In this document: one piece after another, positions 7,651 through 49,580 of the stretch
Layout of the letters: each line of letters opens with the position of its first letter
Numbering within the stretch: the first letter of the stretch is position 1
Origin: Carpediemonas membranifera BICM
Taxonomy: Eukaryota; Protista; Fornicata
NCBI GenBank assembly: GCA_019828565.1
Contig: JAHDYR010000007.1
Location: 444,373-508,372 of the forward strand
DNA length: 64,000 nucleotides
Direction of reading: 5' to 3'
Program-made: the position numbers and the translations under genes
The notes under the pieces: model-generated
Told to the model about the DNA's origin: nothing
The model's input: only the letters and a program-made list of their open reading frames with translations
Database searches by the model: none

Positions 7651-9114
7651 ATGAATGCTTTCATCCATAACAAGACTTACAAGAGCTATGGCTCGGAATT
7701 TAGGCTTTCGTCCGCTTCAAACGGTGATTTTGTCCTCGAGGCCCGTGGTCTCAACATGTCCGGACAGCTGGGCATCTCCTCTTCAGCCGAGATCGTCTCC
7801 GAGTGGCACAAAGTCTCTCTCCCAGCCGATTTCAAGCTCATTCACCTCGCAATCCGTTGCAACACAAGCGTTTTCATCGGGACCACCAAAGGACGCAAGC
7901 GGGCCTTCGCATGCGGCTGCAACACTCATGGCCAGCTGGCGTTGGGCCATAGAGCTAACGTGAACACGCCCACCCCCATCGCCGTCGACAACATCGTCTC
8001 CGTGACGATCAGATGCCGCTCGTGCTTTATACGAACGGCCTCGGTGCCCCACGACGTCTGGTACGCATGTGGGGACAACACGTATGGCCAGCTGTGTCTC
8101 GGTATGTCCGACCACGTCGTCGTCGACCCGACTCGGCTCGACTTCACGGTGCGGCCAGGGATCGCCAAGGTCGATGTCATCGAGGGGTCGACCTTCCTCC
8201 ACATGGCCGACCTCTCCATGTACGCTGCCGGAAACAACAAGCGCGGTCAGCTCGGCGTGGGGCACATGCGCTCGATCGACTGGCCTAGCGTCGTGTTGCT
8301 GCCCAACCAGGCAGTGAGAACTATCAAGGGCGGGTCAGATACGATCTTCTTCATCATGACGGACGGCTCGCTGTACGCCACTGGGTGGAACAGGCGGGGA
8401 CAGGCGGGACTCGGCGCAGAGCCCACCATCATGACGCCTGACCGGGTCCCCCTGCCGGGTCGGGTTTCAGACGTACAGACGATATCCTGCCGCACACTGA
8501 TCGCGCTGGAGGACGGCCGGGTCTTCATCTGCGGCGACAACCTCGCGGGCTTCTTTGTCCCGGACTCGCAGTGCCACATGATCACGAAGCCGCGGGAGTG
8601 GAAGGTCGAGGGCGTCACGGCGGGTGTGATTGTGATGACTCAGCTCGGCCTCTTCGTCCAGGATGCATACGGCAGGTGGAAGGCCAAGGGCGTGAACATG
8701 GCGGGCGAGCTCGGGTTGGGCCACACCAACCCCGTGTCTGAGCTCACGCCGCTCGCCCTGCCACAGAAGCTGGCGGAGTCTGGCATCGAGTTCGTGCTGC
8801 CCTTCCTTCACTCGACGTTCTTCATCCCATTCGGCAGGCACGGCGTCTGGGCGGTGGGCATGAACGACTGGCACCAGCTGGGCGTCGAGACCGCCGCGAA
8901 CCCGGTGCTGGTGCCCTCGCTCGTCGTCAACCCCGACATCGCCATCGCGCTGCAGCCGGCCGTCTTCCACTGGGGCGGCCACGCGCTGATCGTGCGGGGC
9001 GTGCCGGCGATAGGCGACGTTGGCGTGGGCAAGGGGGTGGTCGACAAGGAGAAGCTCGAGCTGGACGTCGACGACGAGACCGAGGAGGCCGGCGGGTCGG
9101 CGACGCTGGCGTGA
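7651..9114 (+). CDS. RCC1-repeat beta-propeller protein
   Basis: About seven G.N..GQLG repeats. Confidence 0.9.
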   Translation: MNAFIHNKTYKSYGSEFRLSSASNGDFVLEARGLNMSGQLGISSSAEIVSEWHKVSLPADFKLIHLAIRCNTSVFIGTTKGRKRAFACGCNTHGQLALGHRANVNTPTPIAVDNIVSVTIRCRSCFIRTASVPHDVWYACGDNTYGQLCLGMSDHVVVDPTRLDFTVRPGIAKVDVIEGSTFLHMADLSMYAAGNNKRGQLGVGHMRSIDWPSVVLLPNQAVRTIKGGSDTIFFIMTDGSLYATGWNRRGQAGLGAEPTIMTPDRVPLPGRVSDVQTISCRTLIALEDGRVFICGDNLAGFFVPDSQCHMITKPREWKVEGVTAGVIVMTQLGLFVQDAYGRWKAKGVNMAGELGLGHTNPVSELTPLALPQKLAESGIEFVLPFLHSTFFIPFGRHGVWAVGMNDWHQLGVETAANPVLVPSLVVNPDIAIALQPAVFHWGGHALIVRGVPAIGDVGVGKGVVDKEKLELDVDDETEEAGGSATLA

Positions 9115-9616
9115 GTAAAGGGACGTTTTGGGCGAAGGGCTGCATGAGAGCGCGTAGCCGTCTCTGCACGATGCTAAAGACTGTTATTGCGGCTTCCGCT
9201 GTTGTCGAGACCCACGCTCGGGCGGGTGCTGTCAGCACCAACAGTCGCGGTGGGCCTAAACACCCGATAAAAACGCCGAGGGCTGTGAATACCAAAGTCC
9301 AGCGCTCAAAAGCACCACGCTGGCAGGAATCCTCGATTTCCCTTCGGATGATGCTCTTGAACCCCCGCAACAGCGATGGCCACAGCATACAGCCGCGCTG
9401 AAATGACGCTGAATATAACAACATGAGCCAGCACATAACAGCACTTCTAGATCATGAAAATGACATTAGAACGACCACAAGTCGTCTACACGCCGAGTTT
9501 CGCCAGGTGCATCTTATGTCCTAACTTCGACTCAGTTGAAGTCGAATACGGAATGACCAGGGAGACAGAAAGAAGAAGTGTAAACGTTTTACTACAGTCA
9601 CCCATGCGCCCGCTAC

Positions 9617-9656
9617 TTGATGTTGGTTAGCTGTTGGTGTCTTTTGACACCGTTTT
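9617..9656 (-). promoter_or_regulatory. Histone H2A 3' stem-loop (GGUGUC-AAAA-GACACC, 9636-9651) plus conserved downstream element CAACAUCAA (9617-9625)
   Basis: Perfect 6-bp stem and 4-nt loop 23 nt after the stop; 23-nt block identical downstream of H2B (49053-49075). Confidence 0.85.
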
Positions 9657-9674
9657 GGGATAATTTTCGATTTT

Positions 9675-10049
9675 TTAGGCCTCCTGAGTGGCGGTCTTGC
9701 CCTTGGACTTGGACAGGATGCGCTGGTGGATGTGGGGGAGAACACCGCCCTGGGGGATTACCACATCGGCAAAGAGGCGGGAAAGCTCCTCGTCGTGGCG
9801 GATGGCCAGCTGGATGTGGCGGGGGGTGATACGGCGCTTGTTGTTCTCGCGCACGGCGTTTCCAGCGAGCTCGATGACCTCAGCGGTGATGTACTCGAGG
9901 ACGGAGGCGAGGTAGACGGGGGCACCGGCACCGATACGCTTGGCATAACGGCCGTCACGGAGCTGACGGTGGATACGACCAACAGGGAACTGGAGGCCGG
10001 CACGCTCGGACCTGGAGGTGGAAGACTTCTTTTCGGTATCCTTGGGCAT
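9675..10049 (-). CDS. H2A: Histone H2A with H2A.X-like C-terminal TQEA
   Basis: [41 protein letters not shown]; true start MPKDTEKK at 10049. Confidence 0.98.
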
Positions 10050-10116
10050 TAGGCTAGGATGAACAGAGTATACTTGCCGTAGCATGCCAGAATATATGTA
10101 ATCTAAAATTACAAGC

Positions 10117-10160
10117 ACTTTGCCAAATAGAGCCCAGTTTATGGCTTTGAAAGTTTGAAA
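10117..10160 (-). promoter_or_regulatory. 44-bp histone upstream element (H2A copy)
   Basis: 41/44 identical to 49537-49580, both starting 68 nt from the ATG. Confidence 0.85.
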
Positions 10161-10610
10161 GAGAAAAGACCCTGTTCTCATTCAAAAACGAAACTACACA
10201 GCTAGAAGAGACAGAAAAGCATCAACACATTGTATATACCTGAACACCATCGTCTTTAACCTTGCTTCATTCACATCTATGTTCATTGTTCTTCAGAAAT
10301 GCATTTCTCGATCAACCACTTCGAAAGCACGAAAGCAACGGCGGATATAGGAATTATACTATGTATACGTAGTATTGCTGTTCCTTCCACTGTTCTTACC
10401 GCATCTCAATGCGAATATACGCTTGTGTATCTTTCCGCGTGGTACGAAATCTGCGTAAATGTACCGAAGCACGCCAACTCGCTGCACACGGTTAGAGGTA
10501 CATGCGTCACTCCCAAATCTGTCGGGGTCAACGCAGTTCGCGGCTGGCCAATCATTTCCAATCAGATGCACAACAGCTCCCGTGGTTGCAAACAATAATC
10601 TCCTCGGATA

Positions 10611-11801
10611 ATGGCGTCCTTGCGTTATGACTACTCTTTGAAGCCTGCTACTGAATCTATACTTGACGGATCGATCCACCAGGTGATCGAAATCAGCCAG
10701 AGCGATTTTGTTACTCCCTTCTCCACGGCATCAACTGGTGGCTACGTGCAGTACTCACAGCACAGTGGCACTCTCACTTTTAAGCCTACTGTCCGCCACA
10801 ACCGCCCCGTCACGCACTCTGTGTACTCCCCCAAACATGACCTCCTTATCACTGGCGCCAGCGACGGCAGTCTCGTCCTTGGCTCCCCCGGGAAGCGCGG
10901 TGCTCGTGCCCATCCCGTGAACGGCGAACTCGCCGGCATTGAACTGACCACTGACGGCGACGCTGCCGTAGTCGTCTCCAAGGCCGGTGTTGTCGCCATC
11001 GTCGAGCTTCCCGAGCTTGAAGTGACTACATTCGACACTTCCGGCCCTGTTGACGCCATCGCCATCCTGGACGACGACTCCGTGGCCCTCTTCGACCGTG
11101 ACCCGGACTCGGTCTACTCTGTCTGGTCCCTCACCCGGCAGCAGCGCATGTCTGTCGTCGGCTCTGCAGAGATCCGCAGCCAGATCGGCGTACCCACTGT
11201 GGTCTGCATCAACGGCGACCAGACCCGCATCGTCTCGGCCCACGGCATCGTCTGCCAGCTGTGGGGTGCCGACTCTGGCCGCCCTCTCGTGCAGTGGCGC
11301 ATGACCTCGGGCATCACGTCCCTCGCATGGATGGACACCATGCTGCTCGTCGGCCACAACGACGGCACGCTATCCATGTGGACTGTGACTGATCGCAAGG
11401 CGACGTCGATGCTGTCCAACAAGTCCCACCGCAGCAAGGTCACTGCCATCGGTGTCGGCAACAAGGCCGTGCTCTCTGTCGAGTCGACCGGCCGCATCTG
11501 CTTCTGGAAGTACGTGCTGGACCCCGTCAACACCCCCTCCCGCTCCCCCTCCGTGCTCCCCGTCGACCCCTACTCGGGCTCCGTGCCCGCCACGCCCTCC
11601 TCCCTTCACCAGTCCACGGTGCCTGCCACGCCCACGACAACGAGGGTGGAGCGTGCCGACGACTTTGGCGAGCCCGCGTCGGAACAGACCATTGTGGACA
11701 TGCTCGATGAAATGACTACGATGCTCTCCACTGCCCTGCAGCGTATGGGCCGCCTTGAGGCCCGGATGGCGTCCCTCGAAGCTCGCCTGAACGCTAAGTA
11801 G
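10611..11801 (+). CDS. WD40 protein with C-terminal coiled coil, POC1-like architecture
   Basis: WD repeats (LITGASDG, VGHNDGTLSMW, H.SKVTAI..W); C-terminal LDEMTTMLS..MGRLEARMASLE resembles the Poc1 coiled-coil motif. Confidence 0.6.
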   Translation: MASLRYDYSLKPATESILDGSIHQVIEISQSDFVTPFSTASTGGYVQYSQHSGTLTFKPTVRHNRPVTHSVYSPKHDLLITGASDGSLVLGSPGKRGARAHPVNGELAGIELTTDGDAAVVVSKAGVVAIVELPELEVTTFDTSGPVDAIAILDDDSVALFDRDPDSVYSVWSLTRQQRMSVVGSAEIRSQIGVPTVVCINGDQTRIVSAHGIVCQLWGADSGRPLVQWRMTSGITSLAWMDTMLLVGHNDGTLSMWTVTDRKATSMLSNKSHRSKVTAIGVGNKAVLSVESTGRICFWKYVLDPVNTPSRSPSVLPVDPYSGSVPATPSSLHQSTVPATPTTTRVERADDFGEPASEQTIVDMLDEMTTMLSTALQRMGRLEARMASLEARLNAK

Positions 11802-12341
11802 TGTGTACAACTATAAATTCCTCTCGATACGGTGGTTGCTGATGAAAATTGGACATCGCGGGTCACCAATGTTCACGAGCATGATGTGCTTGCCTCAATG
11901 TGATGCTTGGCCGCTCGTTTGGAGGAACTAAGGGTTTTGCAAGAATGGTCAGAAAGCAAGGAAACGCTCATTAACTCCACAACAGGTTATTTATTGTCAT
12001 CTATACCACTTTCGCCACTAAAAGTCGAACATTACGCTCTCCCTCGTCTGATGTTGATTAGAAAAGGTTCAAGACCCGAAAAAAATTGTCAACGTCTCCT
12101 AAGAAACGAGGAACATGTGAAAGTATAGTTTGCGATTAGCGAAACACTGGGAATCCTCTAAAAAGAGTCTTCTTCTCCAGCATTAAGCCCTGTGCAAGAT
12201 CAAACCTTCCTAAACTGCACCGACTCTGCGGCCTGAACCAAAGTATGTATATGACGGGCGGTAGGATCCTTACCGTGTCCCCTGTCACTACAGCTCAGTC
12301 TGTGCGCTCATGCCCTGAGAATTGGACTGTACTTTTTTCTA

Positions 12342-12368
12342 CAACCTTTTTTGCGGGAAAAAAGGTTG
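12342..12368 (+). promoter_or_regulatory. Perfect 11-bp inverted repeat just upstream of the RPLP0 ATG
   Basis: CAACCTTTTTT-GCGGG-AAAAAAGGTTG, ending 19 nt before the ATG. Confidence 0.5.
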
Positions 12369-12387
12369 GAACGTTGTGTAACCAGTA

Positions 12388-13296
12388 ATGGACAAGAAGA
12401 GGGAATATTTCGGTCGGCTCACCGATCTCATCCGCACCTATCGCAAGATTATCGTGGTTGAGGCAGATAATGTCGGTTCTTCGCAGCTCCACGCCGTTCG
12501 TCAGGCTCTCCGCGGCAAGGCTGAGGTCCTGTTCGGCAAGAACACCCGTATCATGAAGTGCATCTCTATGATGGCCAACGAGAACGAGGAGATCCAGAAC
12601 CTTGTCCCTCACATCAAGGGCAACATTGGTTTCGTCTTCACCAACGGCGACCTTAAGGAGATCAAGGATATCATCGAGGCTAACCGCCGCGAGGCTCCCG
12701 CCCGTGTCGGTGCTATCGCTCCCGTCGATGTCATCGTCCCCGCTCAGAACACCTCCCTTGAGCCCACCCAGACCTCCTTCCTCCAGGCCCTCAACATCGC
12801 CTCCAAGATCACCCGTGGTACCATCGAGATCCTCAACGACGTCCACCTCATCAAGGCTGGCGACAAGGTCGGTGCCTCCGAGGCTGCCCTCCTCCAGAAG
12901 CTCGACATGCGCCCCTTCTACTACTCGCTCTCCATCAAGACCGTGTACGACAATGGCCAGATCTTCGACGCTGCTATCCTCAACATCACCGACGAGACCT
13001 TCGAGGGCTTCATGGCCACTGGTATCAAGAACATCGCCTCCATCTCCCTTGCTGCCAACATCCCCACCATCGCCGCTGTGCCCCACCTCTTCATCAACGG
13101 CTACAAGAAGGTCCTCTCCGTCGCTGTCGCCACCGAGGTCACCTTCCCCCTCGCCCAGGCCGCCAAGGACTTCATCGCCGATCCTTCCAAGTTCGCCGTC
13201 GCCGCTGCCCCCGCTGCTGCTGCTGAGTCTGCCCCCGTTCAGGACGAGCCCGAGTCCGAGTCTGACTCCGACATGGGCTTCGACCTGTTCGGTTAA
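12388..13296 (+). CDS. RPLP0: 60S acidic ribosomal protein P0 (uL10)
   Basis: DNVGSSQL, GKNT, APARVGAIAP, C-terminal DSDMGFDLFG. Confidence 0.98.
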   Translation: MDKKREYFGRLTDLIRTYRKIIVVEADNVGSSQLHAVRQALRGKAEVLFGKNTRIMKCISMMANENEEIQNLVPHIKGNIGFVFTNGDLKEIKDIIEANRREAPARVGAIAPVDVIVPAQNTSLEPTQTSFLQALNIASKITRGTIEILNDVHLIKAGDKVGASEAALLQKLDMRPFYYSLSIKTVYDNGQIFDAAILNITDETFEGFMATGIKNIASISLAANIPTIAAVPHLFINGYKKVLSVAVATEVTFPLAQAAKDFIADPSKFAVAAAPAAAAESAPVQDEPESESDSDMGFDLFG

Positions 13297-13397
13297 ACGA
13301 CAAACCTTTCAAGCGACGAAGGGTACCGCACCTTCCGTAATCCCACTAAACAACGACCCAAACTTTCTTAAGACAAAAGAACCGCAGAATTTATACA

Positions 13398-14126
13398 CTA
13401 GATGTCGAGATCAACGACGGCATAGCCGACGTCTCGCTCATCGGTGTCGATCTCCCTGCACTGCTGGAGCAACCCGGGCAGGGTCTGGAGCGCGTTGCTC
13501 TGGTCGACCGCAGCCTTGGTCACGGCCAGCACAGCCATGATCAGCTGCTCTTCAACGGGGTCCTTGCGAGCGGTGATGGCAACCCAGTGGAGGTCGAGGA
13601 GGGCAGAGAGCCACGTCACTGAGCGGGTAAGCACGGCGGCGTTATGGGCTGCAGTGGGGCCATTGACCTGCTCTGCCGCGATCTCGGTGAGAACGCCCAT
13701 GAGGAGGATGGGTGAGTCGCCAGTAAGCTTCGAGAGTGCGTCCTTCATGGTATATCGGTCAGTGGGGCGCTTCAAGGCGGTCTGAATCAAAGAAAACTGA
13801 TCCGCGGTAGAGAAACGCTTCGGAGACGATAATATATGATCGATTGCTGCTACAAGCATCTCTTCGTTGAAGCTATTCCGCATCCTGTTTTCGAGTTTCT
13901 GTACTTTCAGCGTTTTGAGCTGTTCTACTGTGTACTTCCGTTCACGGACCTTCAGGAACGCTGGTCGATCGATTTCTATCCCATCTTGCTTCTCATCGGC
14001 TGCGTTTAGCCAATCAGCGAACTTCGCCATCTCGTTCTCGCCTTTCTCTCGACTCTTGCCAAAGTCGTCTGTCAACTGAAGCAGCAAAGCAGGGCCAGAA
14101 CAGTGCATAGTGCTCTTTACTGCCAT
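13398..14126 (-). CDS. Protein resembling the C-terminal domain of NOL11/Utp8
   Basis: WLSALLDLH and terminal YAVVDLDI resemble NOL11 W..LLLDA.. and YSIEVLEL; by-eye similarity only. Confidence 0.4.
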   Translation of the reverse strand: MAVKSTMHCSGPALLLQLTDDFGKSREKGENEMAKFADWLNAADEKQDGIEIDRPAFLKVRERKYTVEQLKTLKVQKLENRMRNSFNEEMLVAAIDHILSSPKRFSTADQFSLIQTALKRPTDRYTMKDALSKLTGDSPILLMGVLTEIAAEQVNGPTAAHNAAVLTRSVTWLSALLDLHWVAITARKDPVEEQLIMAVLAVTKAAVDQSNALQTLPGLLQQCREIDTDERDVGYAVVDLDI

Positions 14127-38748: not shown

Positions 38749-39513
38749 TTACAACTCGTCGTCGTCCTCGAGGTCGTCGAGGCCGAGCGGGGGGAAGTCG
38801 CCCACCTTGACTGCGCTGGGCCGCATAAAGCCGCCGCACATGGGGGCCGCGTCGAAGTAGCGCTTGCCCTTGACCACACCGTCGTGCTTGCCGCTGGGCT
38901 CGTCGTACTCGATGCCGACCCACCAGCCAGACTTGATCTCGGGCACGACGCCGACGAAGCGGACGGTGCCGCGGCGGCCACCAAGGACCTCGACGCGGTC
39001 GCCGACGTGGATGTGCTTGGCCTCCTCCTCGTCGGTCTTGTTCTCCTTCATGTTGCGGATCTTGACGAGCCAGGGGTGGTTGGGCTCCTCGCGCTCGAGC
39101 TTCTTCTTCCAGGCGCGGTACGAGTTGTCTCTCGCCTCGTACGCCTCGTCAGAGATCTCGTACTTCTCGACCTGGCTGAGGTCCTCGAAGCCGCCGTTCT
39201 TGGCCAGCGAGTTGGGGTTCGTGTCCTGGCAGTGCAGCGTGAAGCCGTCCTGGGCGCCGAGCGAGGCGAGCGTCGCGGCGTCGTTGTCAAGCGTGCAGAT
39301 GGTCTTTCCGCTGGCGTCCTGCAGCGTGAGCACCTGGAACGCGGGCTCCGTGCCCGTGCGCAGGTACACCTGGTCCTTGACCTTCTCCACGGTCCATTCG
39401 GGGTGGAAGCGCTGCTCCATGAAGACACCGGAGATATAGTTGTGCGCGATGTGGAGCTTAACCATGTAGCTCTCGGTGGTCTTCCATTCGAGCATCTCCT
39501 TCGGGATGTTCAT
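38749..39513 (-). CDS. TBCB: Tubulin-folding cofactor B (Ubl + CAP-Gly), copy 1
   Basis: E.RF...TV..K..L.TGT, D.SQVEKYEIS..Y..R, GKHDG CAP-Gly motif, acidic DDEL end; start at MNIPKEM. Confidence 0.93.
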   Translation of the reverse strand: MNIPKEMLEWKTTESYMVKLHIAHNYISGVFMEQRFHPEWTVEKVKDQVYLRTGTEPAFQVLTLQDASGKTICTLDNDAATLASLGAQDGFTLHCQDTNPNSLAKNGGFEDLSQVEKYEISDEAYEARDNSYRAWKKKLEREEPNHPWLVKIRNMKENKTDEEEAKHIHVGDRVEVLGGRRGTVRFVGVVPEIKSGWWVGIEYDEPSGKHDGVVKGKRYFDAAPMCGGFMRPSAVKVGDFPPLGLDDLEDDDEL

Positions 39514-40895
39514 CGTTGTGTTGGAATTCGGCAAATATGCTGACGAATCAATCAGATGATGGCGACAAAGGCGCCCCGCCCGGGCATGTAAAGACAGTGG
39601 CACGCGTCAGCCGGTGTTTATGATCTAAGCGCGGTTGTAGTAGCGAGCCTTCTCCTCAGCGGTCTGGTGCTTGCCGTGGCCGAGCTTGCTGCTGGTATCA
39701 ATGAACTTGAGGTCAGCGGCCTCGATGTTGCGGCTGGTGGGCATGATGGCCTTGCGGAGGGTGATGACACGCTTGCTGGTGCCGATGACGGAGCCCTTGA
39801 CGAGGAGGAACTCGTTGTTGATCTGGCCGTAGTGGGGGAAGCCGCCCATGGGGGTGATGGCCTTGTCGGTGAGATCGTAGGAGGTGGTGGCAGAGTTGGC
39901 GGCCTTGCCGTCGGCGAGGCGGTAGATCTGCTTGCCGGTGATGGTGCGGTGGTGGAAGCCATCCTGGCCGGAGCGGGCAACGGAGTAGCGCACGTTGGCA
40001 GGGTGCCAGGGGCCAATGCAACCGACGCGGCGGAGGCCACGGCGGGTCTTGCGGGGAAGGCGGGAGGTGCCCCAGCGGGTGGTGACGCCCTCGTAGCCGT
40101 TACCCTTGGAGACGCCGATGGTGTCGACGAGCTCGTCCTTGGCGAAGATAGAGGAAGCGAGGACCTCCTTCTCGAAGAGGGCGTAGCCGAAGTCGACCTT
40201 CTCGGCGGCGGAGCCACCGTTGATCTGGATCTCCATGATGTGGGCCTTCTTCTGGGAGAAGGGGACCTTGGACATCTGGGTGTGGGCGATCACGCGGACG
40301 ACGGAGCAGTACTTCTTCATGCGCTCGAGCTCGGCCATGCGGGTCTTCTCGGTGGTGGCGTAGTTGGCCTTGTGGACGGAGAAGGCCTTCTTCTTGGAGT
40401 TGTAGAAGTTCTTGTACTGGCGGCGGATAGCCTCCTCAGCGATGTGTTCGGCCCAGACGGTGGTGAGGGCGCGGAGACCGCGGGGGGTCATGGTGTAGCC
40501 GGTGATGCCGATGACGACCATGGGAGGGCAGTCGAGAACGGTAGCGGCCTCGGTAAGCTCGCGCTTATAGAGAGCGGAATCGCGGACAACGTGAGTCATG
40601 CCAGCCTTGAAGCCGATGAAGCCAGTAAGGTGAGGAGCAGCGTCCTTCATGTCCTTGGGGAAGGAACGAACGCGGCCGCGGATGTGCTTGCATCTCTTGC
40701 GGGGAAGGAAACCAAGGGAACCGTGGCGGGGAGCCTCGAACTTACGGTGAGACATTACTGCTGTCTTTCGCGAAACGCTTCAAGAGGTGTCGAGATGTGT
40801 CGAAACTTTACGACTCGGCCCGCCGGACCCTGAAAAGCAGCCGGGCGGCGGAGGGGGACATGGTGACAAGGTATGGCCAGTTTTGGCGTGGAGTT
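38750..40895. repeat. Left arm of 2.15-kb inverted duplication (TBCB + uL3)
   Basis: Reverse complement of 44891-47035; only difference noticed is one C in a homopolymer. Confidence 0.95.
39625..40755 (-). CDS. RPL3: 60S ribosomal protein L3 (uL3), intact copy
   Basis: [47 protein letters not shown]. Confidence 0.98.
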   Translation of the reverse strand: MSHRKFEAPRHGSLGFLPRKRCKHIRGRVRSFPKDMKDAAPHLTGFIGFKAGMTHVVRDSALYKRELTEAATVLDCPPMVVIGITGYTMTPRGLRALTTVWAEHIAEEAIRRQYKNFYNSKKKAFSVHKANYATTEKTRMAELERMKKYCSVVRVIAHTQMSKVPFSQKKAHIMEIQINGGSAAEKVDFGYALFEKEVLASSIFAKDELVDTIGVSKGNGYEGVTTRWGTSRLPRKTRRGLRRVGCIGPWHPANVRYSVARSGQDGFHHRTITGKQIYRLADGKAANSATTSYDLTDKAITPMGGFPHYGQINNEFLLVKGSVIGTSKRVITLRKAIMPTSRNIEAADLKFIDTSSKLGHGKHQTAEEKARYYNRA

Positions 40896-44890: not shown

Positions 44891-47035
44891 AACTCCACGC
44901 CAAAACTGGCCATACCTTGTCACCATGTCCCCCTCCGCCGCCCGGCTGCTTTTCAGGGTCCGGCGGGCCGAGTCGTAAAGTTTCGACACATCTCGACACC
45001 TCTTGAAGCGTTTCGCGAAAGACAGCAGTAATGTCTCACCGTAAGTTCGAGGCTCCCCGCCACGGTTCCCTTGGTTTCCTTCCCCGCAAGAGATGCAAGC
45101 ACATCCGCGGCCGCGTTCGTTCCTTCCCCAAGGACATGAAGGACGCTGCTCCTCACCTTACTGGCTTCATCGGCTTCAAGGCTGGCATGACTCACGTTGT
45201 CCGCGATTCCGCTCTCTATAAGCGCGAGCTTACCGAGGCCGCTACCGTTCTCGACTGCCCTCCCATGGTCGTCATCGGCATCACCGGCTACACCATGACC
45301 CCCGCGGTCTCCGCGCCCTCACCACCGTCTGGGCCGAACACATCGCTGAGGAGGCTATCCGCCGCCAGTACAAGAACTTCTACAACTCCAAGAAGAAGGC
45401 CTTCTCCGTCCACAAGGCCAACTACGCCACCACCGAGAAGACCCGCATGGCCGAGCTCGAGCGCATGAAGAAGTACTGCTCCGTCGTCCGCGTGATCGCC
45501 CACACCCAGATGTCCAAGGTCCCCTTCTCCCAGAAGAAGGCCCACATCATGGAGATCCAGATCAACGGTGGCTCCGCCGCCGAGAAGGTCGACTTCGGCT
45601 ACGCCCTCTTCGAGAAGGAGGTCCTCGCTTCCTCTATCTTCGCCAAGGACGAGCTCGTCGACACCATCGGCGTCTCCAAGGGTAACGGCTACGAGGGCGT
45701 CACCACCCGCTGGGGCACCTCCCGCCTTCCCCGCAAGACCCGCCGTGGCCTCCGCCGCGTCGGTTGCATTGGCCCCTGGCACCCTGCCAACGTGCGCTAC
45801 TCCGTTGCCCGCTCCGGCCAGGATGGCTTCCACCACCGCACCATCACCGGCAAGCAGATCTACCGCCTCGCCGACGGCAAGGCCGCCAACTCTGCCACCA
45901 CCTCCTACGATCTCACCGACAAGGCCATCACCCCCATGGGCGGCTTCCCCCACTACGGCCAGATCAACAACGAGTTCCTCCTCGTCAAGGGCTCCGTCAT
46001 CGGCACCAGCAAGCGTGTCATCACCCTCCGCAAGGCCATCATGCCCACCAGCCGCAACATCGAGGCCGCTGACCTCAAGTTCATTGATACCAGCAGCAAG
46101 CTCGGCCACGGCAAGCACCAGACCGCTGAGGAGAAGGCTCGCTACTACAACCGCGCTTAGATCATAAACACCGGCTGACGCGTGCCACTGTCTTTACATG
46201 CCCGGGCGGGGCGCCTTTGTCGCCATCATCTGATTGATTCGTCAGCATATTTGCCGAATTCCAACACAACGATGAACATCCCGAAGGAGATGCTCGAATG
46301 GAAGACCACCGAGAGCTACATGGTTAAGCTCCACATCGCGCACAACTATATCTCCGGTGTCTTCATGGAGCAGCGCTTCCACCCCGAATGGACCGTGGAG
46401 AAGGTCAAGGACCAGGTGTACCTGCGCACGGGCACGGAGCCCGCGTTCCAGGTGCTCACGCTGCAGGACGCCAGCGGAAAGACCATCTGCACGCTTGACA
46501 ACGACGCCGCGACGCTCGCCTCGCTCGGCGCCCAGGACGGCTTCACGCTGCACTGCCAGGACACGAACCCCAACTCGCTGGCCAAGAACGGCGGCTTCGA
46601 GGACCTCAGCCAGGTCGAGAAGTACGAGATCTCTGACGAGGCGTACGAGGCGAGAGACAACTCGTACCGCGCCTGGAAGAAGAAGCTCGAGCGCGAGGAG
46701 CCCAACCACCCCTGGCTCGTCAAGATCCGCAACATGAAGGAGAACAAGACCGACGAGGAGGAGGCCAAGCACATCCACGTCGGCGACCGCGTCGAGGTCC
46801 TTGGTGGCCGCCGCGGCACCGTCCGCTTCGTCGGCGTCGTGCCCGAGATCAAGTCTGGCTGGTGGGTCGGCATCGAGTACGACGAGCCCAGCGGCAAGCA
46901 CGACGGTGTGGTCAAGGGCAAGCGCTACTTCGACGCGGCCCCCATGTGCGGCGGCTTTATGCGGCCCAGCGCAGTCAAGGTGGGCGACTTCCCCCCGCTC
47001 GGCCTCGACGACCTCGAGGACGACGACGAGTTGTA
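44891..47035. repeat. Right arm of 2.15-kb inverted duplication (uL3 + TBCB)
   Basis: Matches the reverse complement of 38750-40895. Confidence 0.95.
45031..46160 (+). pseudogene. RPL3: uL3 copy 2 with a 1-nt deletion (C5 vs C6 at 45299-45303): real frameshift or sequencing error
   Basis: Split into two ORFs; otherwise apparently identical to 39625-40755. Confidence 0.5.
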
Positions 47036-47036
47036 G
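46272..47036 (+). CDS. TBCB: Tubulin-folding cofactor B, copy 2
   Basis: Protein identical to copy 1; stop TAG vs TAA. Confidence 0.93.
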   Translation: MNIPKEMLEWKTTESYMVKLHIAHNYISGVFMEQRFHPEWTVEKVKDQVYLRTGTEPAFQVLTLQDASGKTICTLDNDAATLASLGAQDGFTLHCQDTNPNSLAKNGGFEDLSQVEKYEISDEAYEARDNSYRAWKKKLEREEPNHPWLVKIRNMKENKTDEEEAKHIHVGDRVEVLGGRRGTVRFVGVVPEIKSGWWVGIEYDEPSGKHDGVVKGKRYFDAAPMCGGFMRPSAVKVGDFPPLGLDDLEDDDEL

Positions 47037-48864: not shown

Positions 48865-49036
48865 AAGCGGGTCACGGTTTCCAGACTAGACGAGCTCGTA
48901 AACAAGATGTTGTTTATATGGTTAGACATCATGCATTGATCGTTCGCAGACAGGCGCCACTGGTGATGGCAGTCGACAGCTTGGAGAAAGAAGTAAAGAG
49001 AAAGGGAGCAAAGGGTTTATAGGGAAGCGGAAAGCG

Positions 49037-49075
49037 TTGATGTTGTTAACTTTTGGTGTCTTTTGACACCGTTTT
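49037..49075 (-). promoter_or_regulatory. Histone H2B 3' stem-loop (49055-49070) plus downstream element CAACAUCAA (49037-49045)
   Basis: Hairpin identical to the H2A one, 21 nt after the stop. Confidence 0.85.
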
Positions 49076-49091
49076 AGATTGATTGTTTGAC

Positions 49092-49469
49092 TTATTCCTC
49101 GTCAGCCGCGTTGGACTGGTACTTGGTGATGGACTTAGTACCCTCGGAGATGGCGTGGCGGGAGAGCTCGCCGGGGAGGACAAGGCGGCAGGCAGAGTGG
49201 ATCTCGCGGGAGGAGAGGGTGGAGCGCTTGTTGAGGCGAGCAAGGCGGCCAGCCTCCTCGGCGATGCGCTCGAAGAGATCGACGACAAGGGAGTCCATGA
49301 CGTTCATGCCCTTGGTGGAGATACCGAAGTCGGGGTGGACCTGGCGGAGAACACGGTAGATGTACGAGTGGTAGGTCTCCTTGCGAGCCTTCTTGCGGGC
49401 GGGGCCCTCGTGGGTCTTCTCGACCTTCTCGGCAGCGGGCTTAGTTTCCTTCTTTTCCTTGGGAGCCAT
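49092..49469 (-). CDS. H2B: Histone H2B
   Basis: [47 protein letters not shown]. Confidence 0.98.
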
Positions 49470-49536: not shown

Positions 49537-49580
49537 ACTTTGTCAAATAGAGCTCAGTTTATGGCTTTGAAAATTTGAAA
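49537..49580 (-). promoter_or_regulatory. 44-bp histone upstream element (H2B copy)
   Basis: 41/44 identical to 10117-10160, same 68-nt spacing from the ATG. Confidence 0.85.

What the first reader, a model, noticed from the sequence alone, without database searches (positions are those of the whole stretch)
9617..9656. Candidate non-canonical histone mRNA 3'-end system: AAAA-loop stem-loop plus a conserved downstream element, shared by H2A and H2B
Seen: in mRNA sense both genes read AAAAC-GGUGUC-AAAA-GACACC-AA, identical over 23 nt (9634-9656 and 49053-49075), 23 and 21 nt after the stop. Both continue AA.AG.UAAC(C)AACAUCAA, with CAACAUCAA 9-10 nt past the hairpin. Established: replication-dependent histone mRNAs end in a GG-opened 6-bp stem with a 4-nt loop, an A-rich 5' flank bound by SLBP, and a downstream element read by U7 snRNA. 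The canonical loop is U-rich, with U1 and U3 contacted by SLBP. Here the geometry is exact but the loop is all A, and the downstream element is C/A-rich rather than purine-rich. Inference: a re-coded stem-loop binding protein and possibly a U7-like small RNA carrying UUGAUGUUG, or a hairpin-assisted poly(A) signal.
Basis: partly seen in the sequence, partly recalled or inferred. Interest (0 to 1): 0.9.

Follow-up and report, generated by a model that had tools for sequence, protein, structure and literature searches.

The report
Histone genes end like snRNA genes
In the protist Carpediemonas, every ordinary histone gene ends in a drifted version of the classic histone RNA hairpin followed by the same short signal that follows its spliceosomal small RNAs, suggesting histone messages can be cut by the small-RNA machinery instead of the U7 system of animals.

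Summary
The genome is Carpediemonas membranifera. The stem GGUGUC/GACACC follows all 13 intact canonical histone genes and 2 H4 fragments (15 of 16 genome matches) and no variant histone. The loop is AAAA only in H2A/H2B; H3/H4 have AUCU, and a sister species has four other loops. Related protist assemblies carry this stem with canonical UUUC-type loops and compensatory or G-U changes, so it is the histone stem-loop with a relaxed loop, not an AAAA code. The downstream element, UAA(C/U)(C)AAHAUCA, 5-6 nt behind every hairpin, is not histone-specific: it directly follows both U1, all six U2 and the U4 gene, and occurs about 790 times (33 in controls). An INTS11-type nuclease is encoded; SLBP, U7, Lsm10/11 were not found (weak negatives). 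cDNA contigs show H2A mRNA polyadenylated 57-61 nt past the hairpin after AGUAAA. Best reading: snRNA-type cleavage at the box with a backup poly(A) site; cleavage itself is inferred, not shown. The scan's first readers noted the hairpin, and this motif after U1, on other contigs.

The parts
9675..10049 (-). Canonical histone H2A coding sequence (124 aa)
9636..9656 (-). A-rich flank and 6-bp/4-nt hairpin GGUGUC-AAAA-GACACC (hairpin 9636-9651)
9618..9629 (-). 3' box UAACCAACAUCA, 6 nt behind the hairpin; same element as behind U1, U2, U4
9588..9593 (-). AGUAAA, likely poly(A) signal, 9-13 nt before the mapped poly(A) sites
   Evidence: PMC11529991 for the hexamer type
9575..9579 (-). Poly(A) addition sites of H2A mRNA (non-templated tails in two cDNA runs; the identical C63 copy may be the source)
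   Evidence: table 7
10131..10148 (-). Upstream motif shared by all four core histone classes (likely histone promoter element)
12066..12201 (-). U4 snRNA gene with Sm site (12076-12087) and terminal hairpin
   Evidence: (Rfam U4, E 1.4e-6, below gathering score)
12049..12060 (-). 3' box UAAUCAACAUCA, 5 nt behind the U4 terminal hairpin
49092..49469 (-). Canonical histone H2B coding sequence (125 aa)
49055..49075 (-). A-rich flank and hairpin of H2B (hairpin 49055-49070)
49038..49048 (-). 3' box UAACAACAUCA (11-nt form, identical to the U1 box), 6 nt behind the hairpin
49016..49021 (-). UAUAAA, candidate poly(A) signal of H2B (not mapped)
   Evidence: inference
49551..49568 (-). Upstream histone motif of H2B

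Best explanation
Canonical histone genes of Carpediemonas carry a three-part 3' end: (1) the ancestral histone stem-loop, whose stem is kept and whose loop has lost the U1/U3 constraint; (2) 5-6 nt later the organism's general signal for non-polyadenylated Pol II ends, the box that also follows U1, U2 and U4; (3) an ordinary poly(A) signal 20-60 nt further on. Most likely the nascent RNA is cut at or just before the box by the machinery that ends snRNAs (candidate nuclease: the INTS11 orthologue), leaving an mRNA that ends in hairpin plus about 5 nt, as in animals but without U7. Transcripts that escape are polyadenylated downstream. SHOWN: distribution of hairpin and box, covariation, identity of the box behind snRNA genes, presence of INTS11 and CPSF73, existence of a poly(A) form. 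INFERRED: that the box directs cleavage, that it does so on histone RNA, that INTS11 is the nuclease, that the stem is read by a loop-tolerant protein or simply blocks trimming.
For: All 15 histone hairpins have the box at 5-6 nt; so do 4 of 4 readable histone genes of the sister assembly. U2 x6, U1 x2 and U4 end in a hairpin followed by the box within about 5-11 nt. In the 64-kb window the box occurs three times only: H2A, H2B, U4; none of 36 other genes has it within 100 nt of the stop. Variant histones lack hairpin and box. Hairpin: 99.4% of cells paired, 11 double-sided changes, G-U pairs. INTS11 orthologue at C9:154335 (best PDB match INTS11 E 2e-97, CPSF3 2e-79) distinct from CPSF73 at C63:516479. 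The poly(A)-type hexamer of H2A/H2B lies 70-85 nt from the stop, whereas most other window genes with such a hexamer have it within 40 nt, as expected of a backup site. Precedent in the same phylum: a 12-nt motif marks processed 3' ends of Giardia snRNAs and snoRNAs (PMC3510501).
Against: The only histone mRNA ends seen are polyadenylated and contain the box uncut; no end at the hairpin was observed, and contigs from one sample cannot show one. No end of any Carpediemonas snRNA was mapped, so the box's role is read from position alone. INTS2 and INTS3 families were not found (no positive control). Many of the roughly 790 boxes lie in repeats, some inside ORFs, so the box alone need not cut. 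No snRNA gene of the sister species could be reached.
Confidence: 0.55

Rival explanations
1. Histone mRNAs are always polyadenylated. The hairpin is an internal 3'-UTR element for stability or translation, and the box is a pausing, termination or decay signal that does not make the mature end.
For: Poly(A) tails at 9575-9579 in two runs, and H2B cDNA running past the box. Ten of 11 distinct flanks show a UAAA-type hexamer downstream. Giardia and other protists polyadenylate histone mRNAs (PMC1872034, PMC11529991). In the three related assemblies the hairpin is followed by AUAAA within a few nt in all 12 H2B genes and no box was seen.
Against: Does not explain the fixed 5-6 nt spacing from hairpin to box in 19 genes of two species, the same geometry as at snRNA ends. 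Tailed contigs come from cDNA that selects for tails.
Confidence: 0.23
2. The box is bound by a sequence-specific RNA- or DNA-binding terminator (Nrd1/Nab3-like or roadblock-like), and exonucleases trim back to the hairpin; INTS11 is not the agent.
For: The box is long, exact and very frequent, unlike the loose metazoan 3' box (own knowledge). Other Integrator subunits were not found. In Giardia the factor for the analogous motif is unidentified (PMC3510501).
Against: A clear INTS11 is retained in a reduced genome and needs substrates.
Confidence: 0.12
3. One reading: a re-coded SLBP reads the AAAA loop and a U7-like RNA pairs with the downstream element.
For: Geometry matches the animal system. 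SLBP and U7 are short and divergent, and could be missed.
Against: At least six different loops in the genus. Element shared with snRNA genes and hundreds of other sites. No SLBP with the Pfam family, two protein queries or two motif patterns. No U7. The 16 Sm/Lsm hits read as ordinary Sm/Lsm proteins on inspection; the one odd one matches Lsm7 best.
Confidence: 0.06
4. The inverted repeat is a palindromic DNA site for a dimeric protein with a free 4-bp spacer.
For: Invariant arms with a variable spacer inside one genome.
Against: G-U pairs in 13 cells across relatives and a 3-nt loop variant fit RNA pairing, not DNA symmetry; the element lies inside the transcript and matches the histone stem-loop in size and place.
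Confidence: 0.04

Closest known systems
Metazoan replication-dependent histone 3' end (SLBP, U7 snRNP, Rfam RF00032)
   Same: 6-bp stem, usually 4-nt loop, invariant G-C at pair 2, A-rich 5' flank, about 20 nt after the stop, restricted to canonical histones
   Different: Stem GGUGUY/RACACC; loop unconstrained, no U1/U3; downstream element C/A-rich and shared with snRNA genes; SLBP, U7, Lsm10/11 not found; poly(A) form present
Giardia 12-nt ncRNA 3' processing motif (PMC3510501)
   Same: Same phylum; about 12 nt; lies a few nt behind snRNA 3' ends; usable to find new ncRNAs
   Different: Different sequence (commonest form UCCUUUACUCAA); Giardia histone genes have no stem-loop and are polyadenylated (PMC1872034); the paper does not mention histones
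snRNA 3' box and Integrator (INTS11)
   Same: Terminal hairpin followed by a box at U1, U2, U4; INTS11 orthologue present
   Different: In animals Integrator binds histone gene ends but its nuclease does not process histone RNA (PMC4349240); no shared snRNA/histone promoter element found here; other subunits unverified
C. elegans histone 3' ends: hairpin, AATCC element, poly(A) signal (PMC1924863)
   Same: Three-part layout with a downstream poly(A) signal behind every gene
   Different: C. elegans has an SLBP (CDL-1) and a U-containing loop; its element was proposed as a U7 site, not as an snRNA box
Divergent protist and fungal histone stem-loops with poly(A) signals (bioRxiv 10.64898/2026.10.14.759114)
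   Same: Divergent stem-loops, loss of the loop U in some lineages, stem-loop plus poly(A) signal
   Different: Carpediemonas is not mentioned in the main text; no snRNA-box sharing appears in the results read

Membership tests
Histone 3' stem-loop (RF00032 / SLBP site) | 6-bp stem with 4-nt loop shortly after the stop of all four core histones | tested here: met
Histone 3' stem-loop (RF00032 / SLBP site) | Absent from variant histones and other genes | tested here: met
Histone 3' stem-loop (RF00032 / SLBP site) | Invariant G-C at stem pair 2 | tested here: met
   26 of 26 rows
Histone 3' stem-loop (RF00032 / SLBP site) | U at loop positions 1 and 3 | tested here: not met
   AAAA and AUCU in this genome; met in most loops of the three related assemblies
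Histone 3' stem-loop (RF00032 / SLBP site) | Match to the Rfam model | tested here: not met
SLBP/U7 pathway | SLBP gene | tested here: inconclusive
   not found with five queries; no positive control; profile search of the proteome not available
SLBP/U7 pathway | U7 snRNA, Lsm10, Lsm11 | tested here: inconclusive
   none found; weak negatives
SLBP/U7 pathway | Histone-specific purine-rich downstream element | tested here: not met
   element is C/A-rich and shared with U1, U2, U4
SLBP/U7 pathway | Mature mRNA ends at the hairpin without poly(A) | tested here: inconclusive
   poly(A) form seen; tail-less form cannot be seen in contigs
SLBP/U7 pathway | ERI1 (3'hExo) | not tested
   no specific family model or query in hand
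snRNA 3' box / Giardia-type ncRNA motif | Conserved element just behind Pol II snRNA genes | tested here: met
   U1 x2, U2 x6, U4; U5 not found; U6 flank not read
snRNA 3' box / Giardia-type ncRNA motif | Mature ends map at or just before the element | not testable with these tools
   no raw reads; one read-laying run used
Integrator | INTS11 nuclease distinct from CPSF73 | tested here: met
Integrator | Partner subunits (INTS9, INTS4, INTS2, INTS3 and others) | tested here: inconclusive
   two further lactamase-fold hits not read; INTS2, INTS3 not found

The most novel reading that the evidence does not exclude
Carpediemonas has replaced the SLBP/U7 system outright: its histone genes have been wired to the snRNA 3'-end signal, and an INTS11-containing complex cuts histone pre-mRNA directly, with one box serving snRNAs, histone mRNAs and many other transcripts.
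Probability: 0.35. Interest if true: 0.85.

Novelty: new variant of a known kind. Interest (0 to 1): 0.68.

Why it matters
How protists with histone stem-loops but no detectable U7 form histone mRNA ends is open, and the factor that reads the Giardia ncRNA motif is unidentified. Here one cis-element links canonical histone genes to snRNA genes in two species' histone loci, with an INTS11 candidate in the genome. That gives a cheap, sharp test (3' ends of total RNA) and a search key for unannotated ncRNAs. I found no paper describing it (searches; the library is incomplete).

Tried and rejected
SLBP hunts: the pattern hit at C54:774215 is the first exon of a Uba1-like gene; C26:341039 is an unrelated long ORF. 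The short motif patterns were designed from memory; the protein queries came from metagenome loci fetched. Shared histone/snRNA promoter: TAAACTGAG upstream of four U2 copies overlaps the end of a cathepsin-B-like gene and is missing from U1 and two U2 copies, so rejected. Box as a fused branch point and splice acceptor: the base after it is not a fixed G, rejected. L189 as Lsm10/11: best match Lsm7. snRNA genes in relatives through RPLP0 synteny or BLAST: none. U5 not found. The gap in canonical H2A contigs in the deepest run X1 was not used: the tool warns that holes prove nothing. Davila Lopez and Samuelsson 2008 was not held. One fold (L221) had wrong coordinates and was ignored. MAFFT put the gap of the 15-nt H3 hairpin in the stem; one search recounts with the gap in the loop.

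Full report
Source. The genome has 24.24 Mb in 69 contigs, the figures given for Carpediemonas membranifera (PMC8516963), and its H3 and H4 proteins carry that name.

Observation. Both hairpins fold as 6 bp plus 4 nt with z-scores of -3.7 and -4.1.

The hairpin is a histone-class element, but the loop is not AAAA throughout. The genome holds 16 exact GGTGTC-N4-GACACC sites. Fifteen follow a canonical histone stop by 17-23 nt: H2A x3 and H2B x2 with loop AAAA, H3 x4, H4 x4 and two H4 3' fragments with loop AUCU. The H3 variants, the CenH3-like gene, the H2A.Z-like genes and the H2B variants lack it. One of 36 other window genes has an unrelated A/U-rich hairpin, none has this one.

Relatives. 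Assembly GCA_002919055.1 (H2B 80%, H3 92% identical; probably C. frisia, inferred) has GGUGUU/AACACC with loops ACCA, AUCA and UUCA, and for H3 GGUUCU-CAU-AGAACC, three compensatory changes and a 3-nt loop. Three further assemblies (Eukaryota sp. TZLM3-RCL, TZLM1-RC, GEM-RC1; skoliomonad metamonads by my own knowledge) carry RGUGUU/AAYACY behind all four core histones with loops UUUC, UAUC, UGUC, CUUC or UGUG. Across 26 rows 99.4% of cells pair, pair 2 is always G-C, 11 cells change on both sides and G-U pairs occur; slid controls pair 34-55% (14 distinct hairpins recounted; the rows are related, so the shuffle counts are not probabilities). This bridges the Carpediemonas hairpin to a canonical-loop histone stem-loop and favours RNA structure over a DNA palindrome. 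The loop constraint has relaxed in Carpediemonas; nothing points to a reader specific for AAAA. Rfam RF00032 misses both these and the skoliomonad hairpins.

The downstream element. Its full form is UAA(C/U)(C)AA(C/A/U)AUCA and it starts 5-6 nt behind all 15 hairpins; the sister assembly keeps a close form at the same place in four genes. It is not histone-specific. The 12-nt form has 343 exact copies against 1 in the reversed control, the 11-nt form 448 against 32. The third copy in this window lies at 12049-12060, 5 nt behind the terminal hairpin of a U4 snRNA gene (Rfam E 1.4e-6). All six U2 genes and both U1 genes are followed by it as well. In 176 kb of sequence not chosen for the motif there were four copies against 0.4 expected: H2A, H2B, U4 and one unexplained. 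Many other copies sit in multi-copy repeats, often shortly upstream of an ORF, some inside ORFs. By position the element is the 3'-end signal of Pol II small RNAs in this organism. The nearest precedent is the 12-nt Giardia motif, at which snRNA and snoRNA ends map and whose factor is unknown (PMC3510501); the sequences differ, so I call them analogous, not homologous.

Transcripts. Contigs of four runs (one sample, one study, no raw reads) were laid on 8000-13500. H2A cDNA runs through hairpin and box and carries non-templated poly(A) at 9575, 9576 and 9579, 57-61 nt past the hairpin and 9-13 nt after AGUAAA; the DNA there is not A-rich. The 5' ends seen match the C63 copy, whose 3' flank is the same, so the copy of origin is open. 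H2B cDNA (C37 copy) also passes the box. So a polyadenylated form exists. A tail-less form ending at the hairpin can be neither shown nor excluded with these data.

Proteins. Two catalytic-type beta-CASP genes were found: CPSF73 and a separate INTS11. SLBP was not found with the Pfam family, two protein queries or two patterns; U7 was not found; the Sm/Lsm set shows no evident Lsm10/11. These searches had no positive control and do not show absence. ERI1 was not tested.

Mechanism. Most likely (0.55) the histone genes use the snRNA 3'-end signal: cleavage at or just before the box would leave hairpin plus about 5 nt, the length of the animal histone mRNA end (own knowledge), and the distant poly(A) signal catches read-through. 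Rivals: always polyadenylated with an internal hairpin (0.23), a binding-protein terminator with trimming (0.12), a U7-like system (0.06), a DNA site (0.04). In animals Integrator sits at histone gene ends but does not cut histone RNA (PMC4349240), so direct use would be new.

Verdict. A real, conserved element; a new variant of the histone 3'-end system, with a link to snRNA processing that I did not find in the papers searched. I reached the snRNA link before consulting the scan's notes; one earlier unchecked note (s1-530142) reports a shared 12-nt motif after U1 and after a dangling dynein donor, which would extend the Giardia parallel; I checked only the U1 half. Interest 0.68, held down because no tail-less end has been observed.

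Noticed in passing
window 12066-12201 (-): U4 snRNA gene, below Rfam's gathering score, head to head with RPLP0.
   Followed up: yes
window 10131-10148 and 49551-49568 (-); all core histone classes: Shared upstream motif of about 45 nt (core AAAGCCATAAACTGAGCT); a related motif lies upstream of histones in GCA_002919055.1. Two of three tandem H3 copies on C24 lack it.
   Followed up: partly
L219-L223 (C63, C9, C58, C3): Five of six U2 genes lie about 50-60 nt behind cathepsin-B-like genes on the same strand; possibly dicistronic. The U2 branch-pairing region is divergent.
   Followed up: no
L197 (G000 C1:104494 and 104613): Two boxes 119 nt apart frame a hairpin-rich segment; candidate pair of unannotated small RNAs, no Rfam match.
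   Followed up: partly
L200, L205, L206, L198 families (G000 C1, C3, C4, C11 and others): Several unrelated repeat families carry one or two boxes 60-120 nt upstream of an ORF in the same orientation; could insulate or attenuate mobile elements.
   Followed up: partly
L044-L055: Three skoliomonad-type assemblies have clustered H2A/H2B/H3/H4 quartets with canonical-loop histone hairpins directly followed by AUAAA; Rfam does not detect them.
   Followed up: partly
L011, L014 (G000 C39:1045705, C65:29450): Two H4 3' fragments keep hairpin and box intact behind unrelated sequence.
   Followed up: partly
window 38749-40755 (-) and 45031-47036 (+): Inverted duplication of an RPL3 gene and a tubulin-cofactor-B-like gene; the + strand RPL3 copy is split over two frames.
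   Followed up: no
G000 C39:312760-312855 (-): Probable U6 gene (E 4e-6); flank not read.
   Followed up: no
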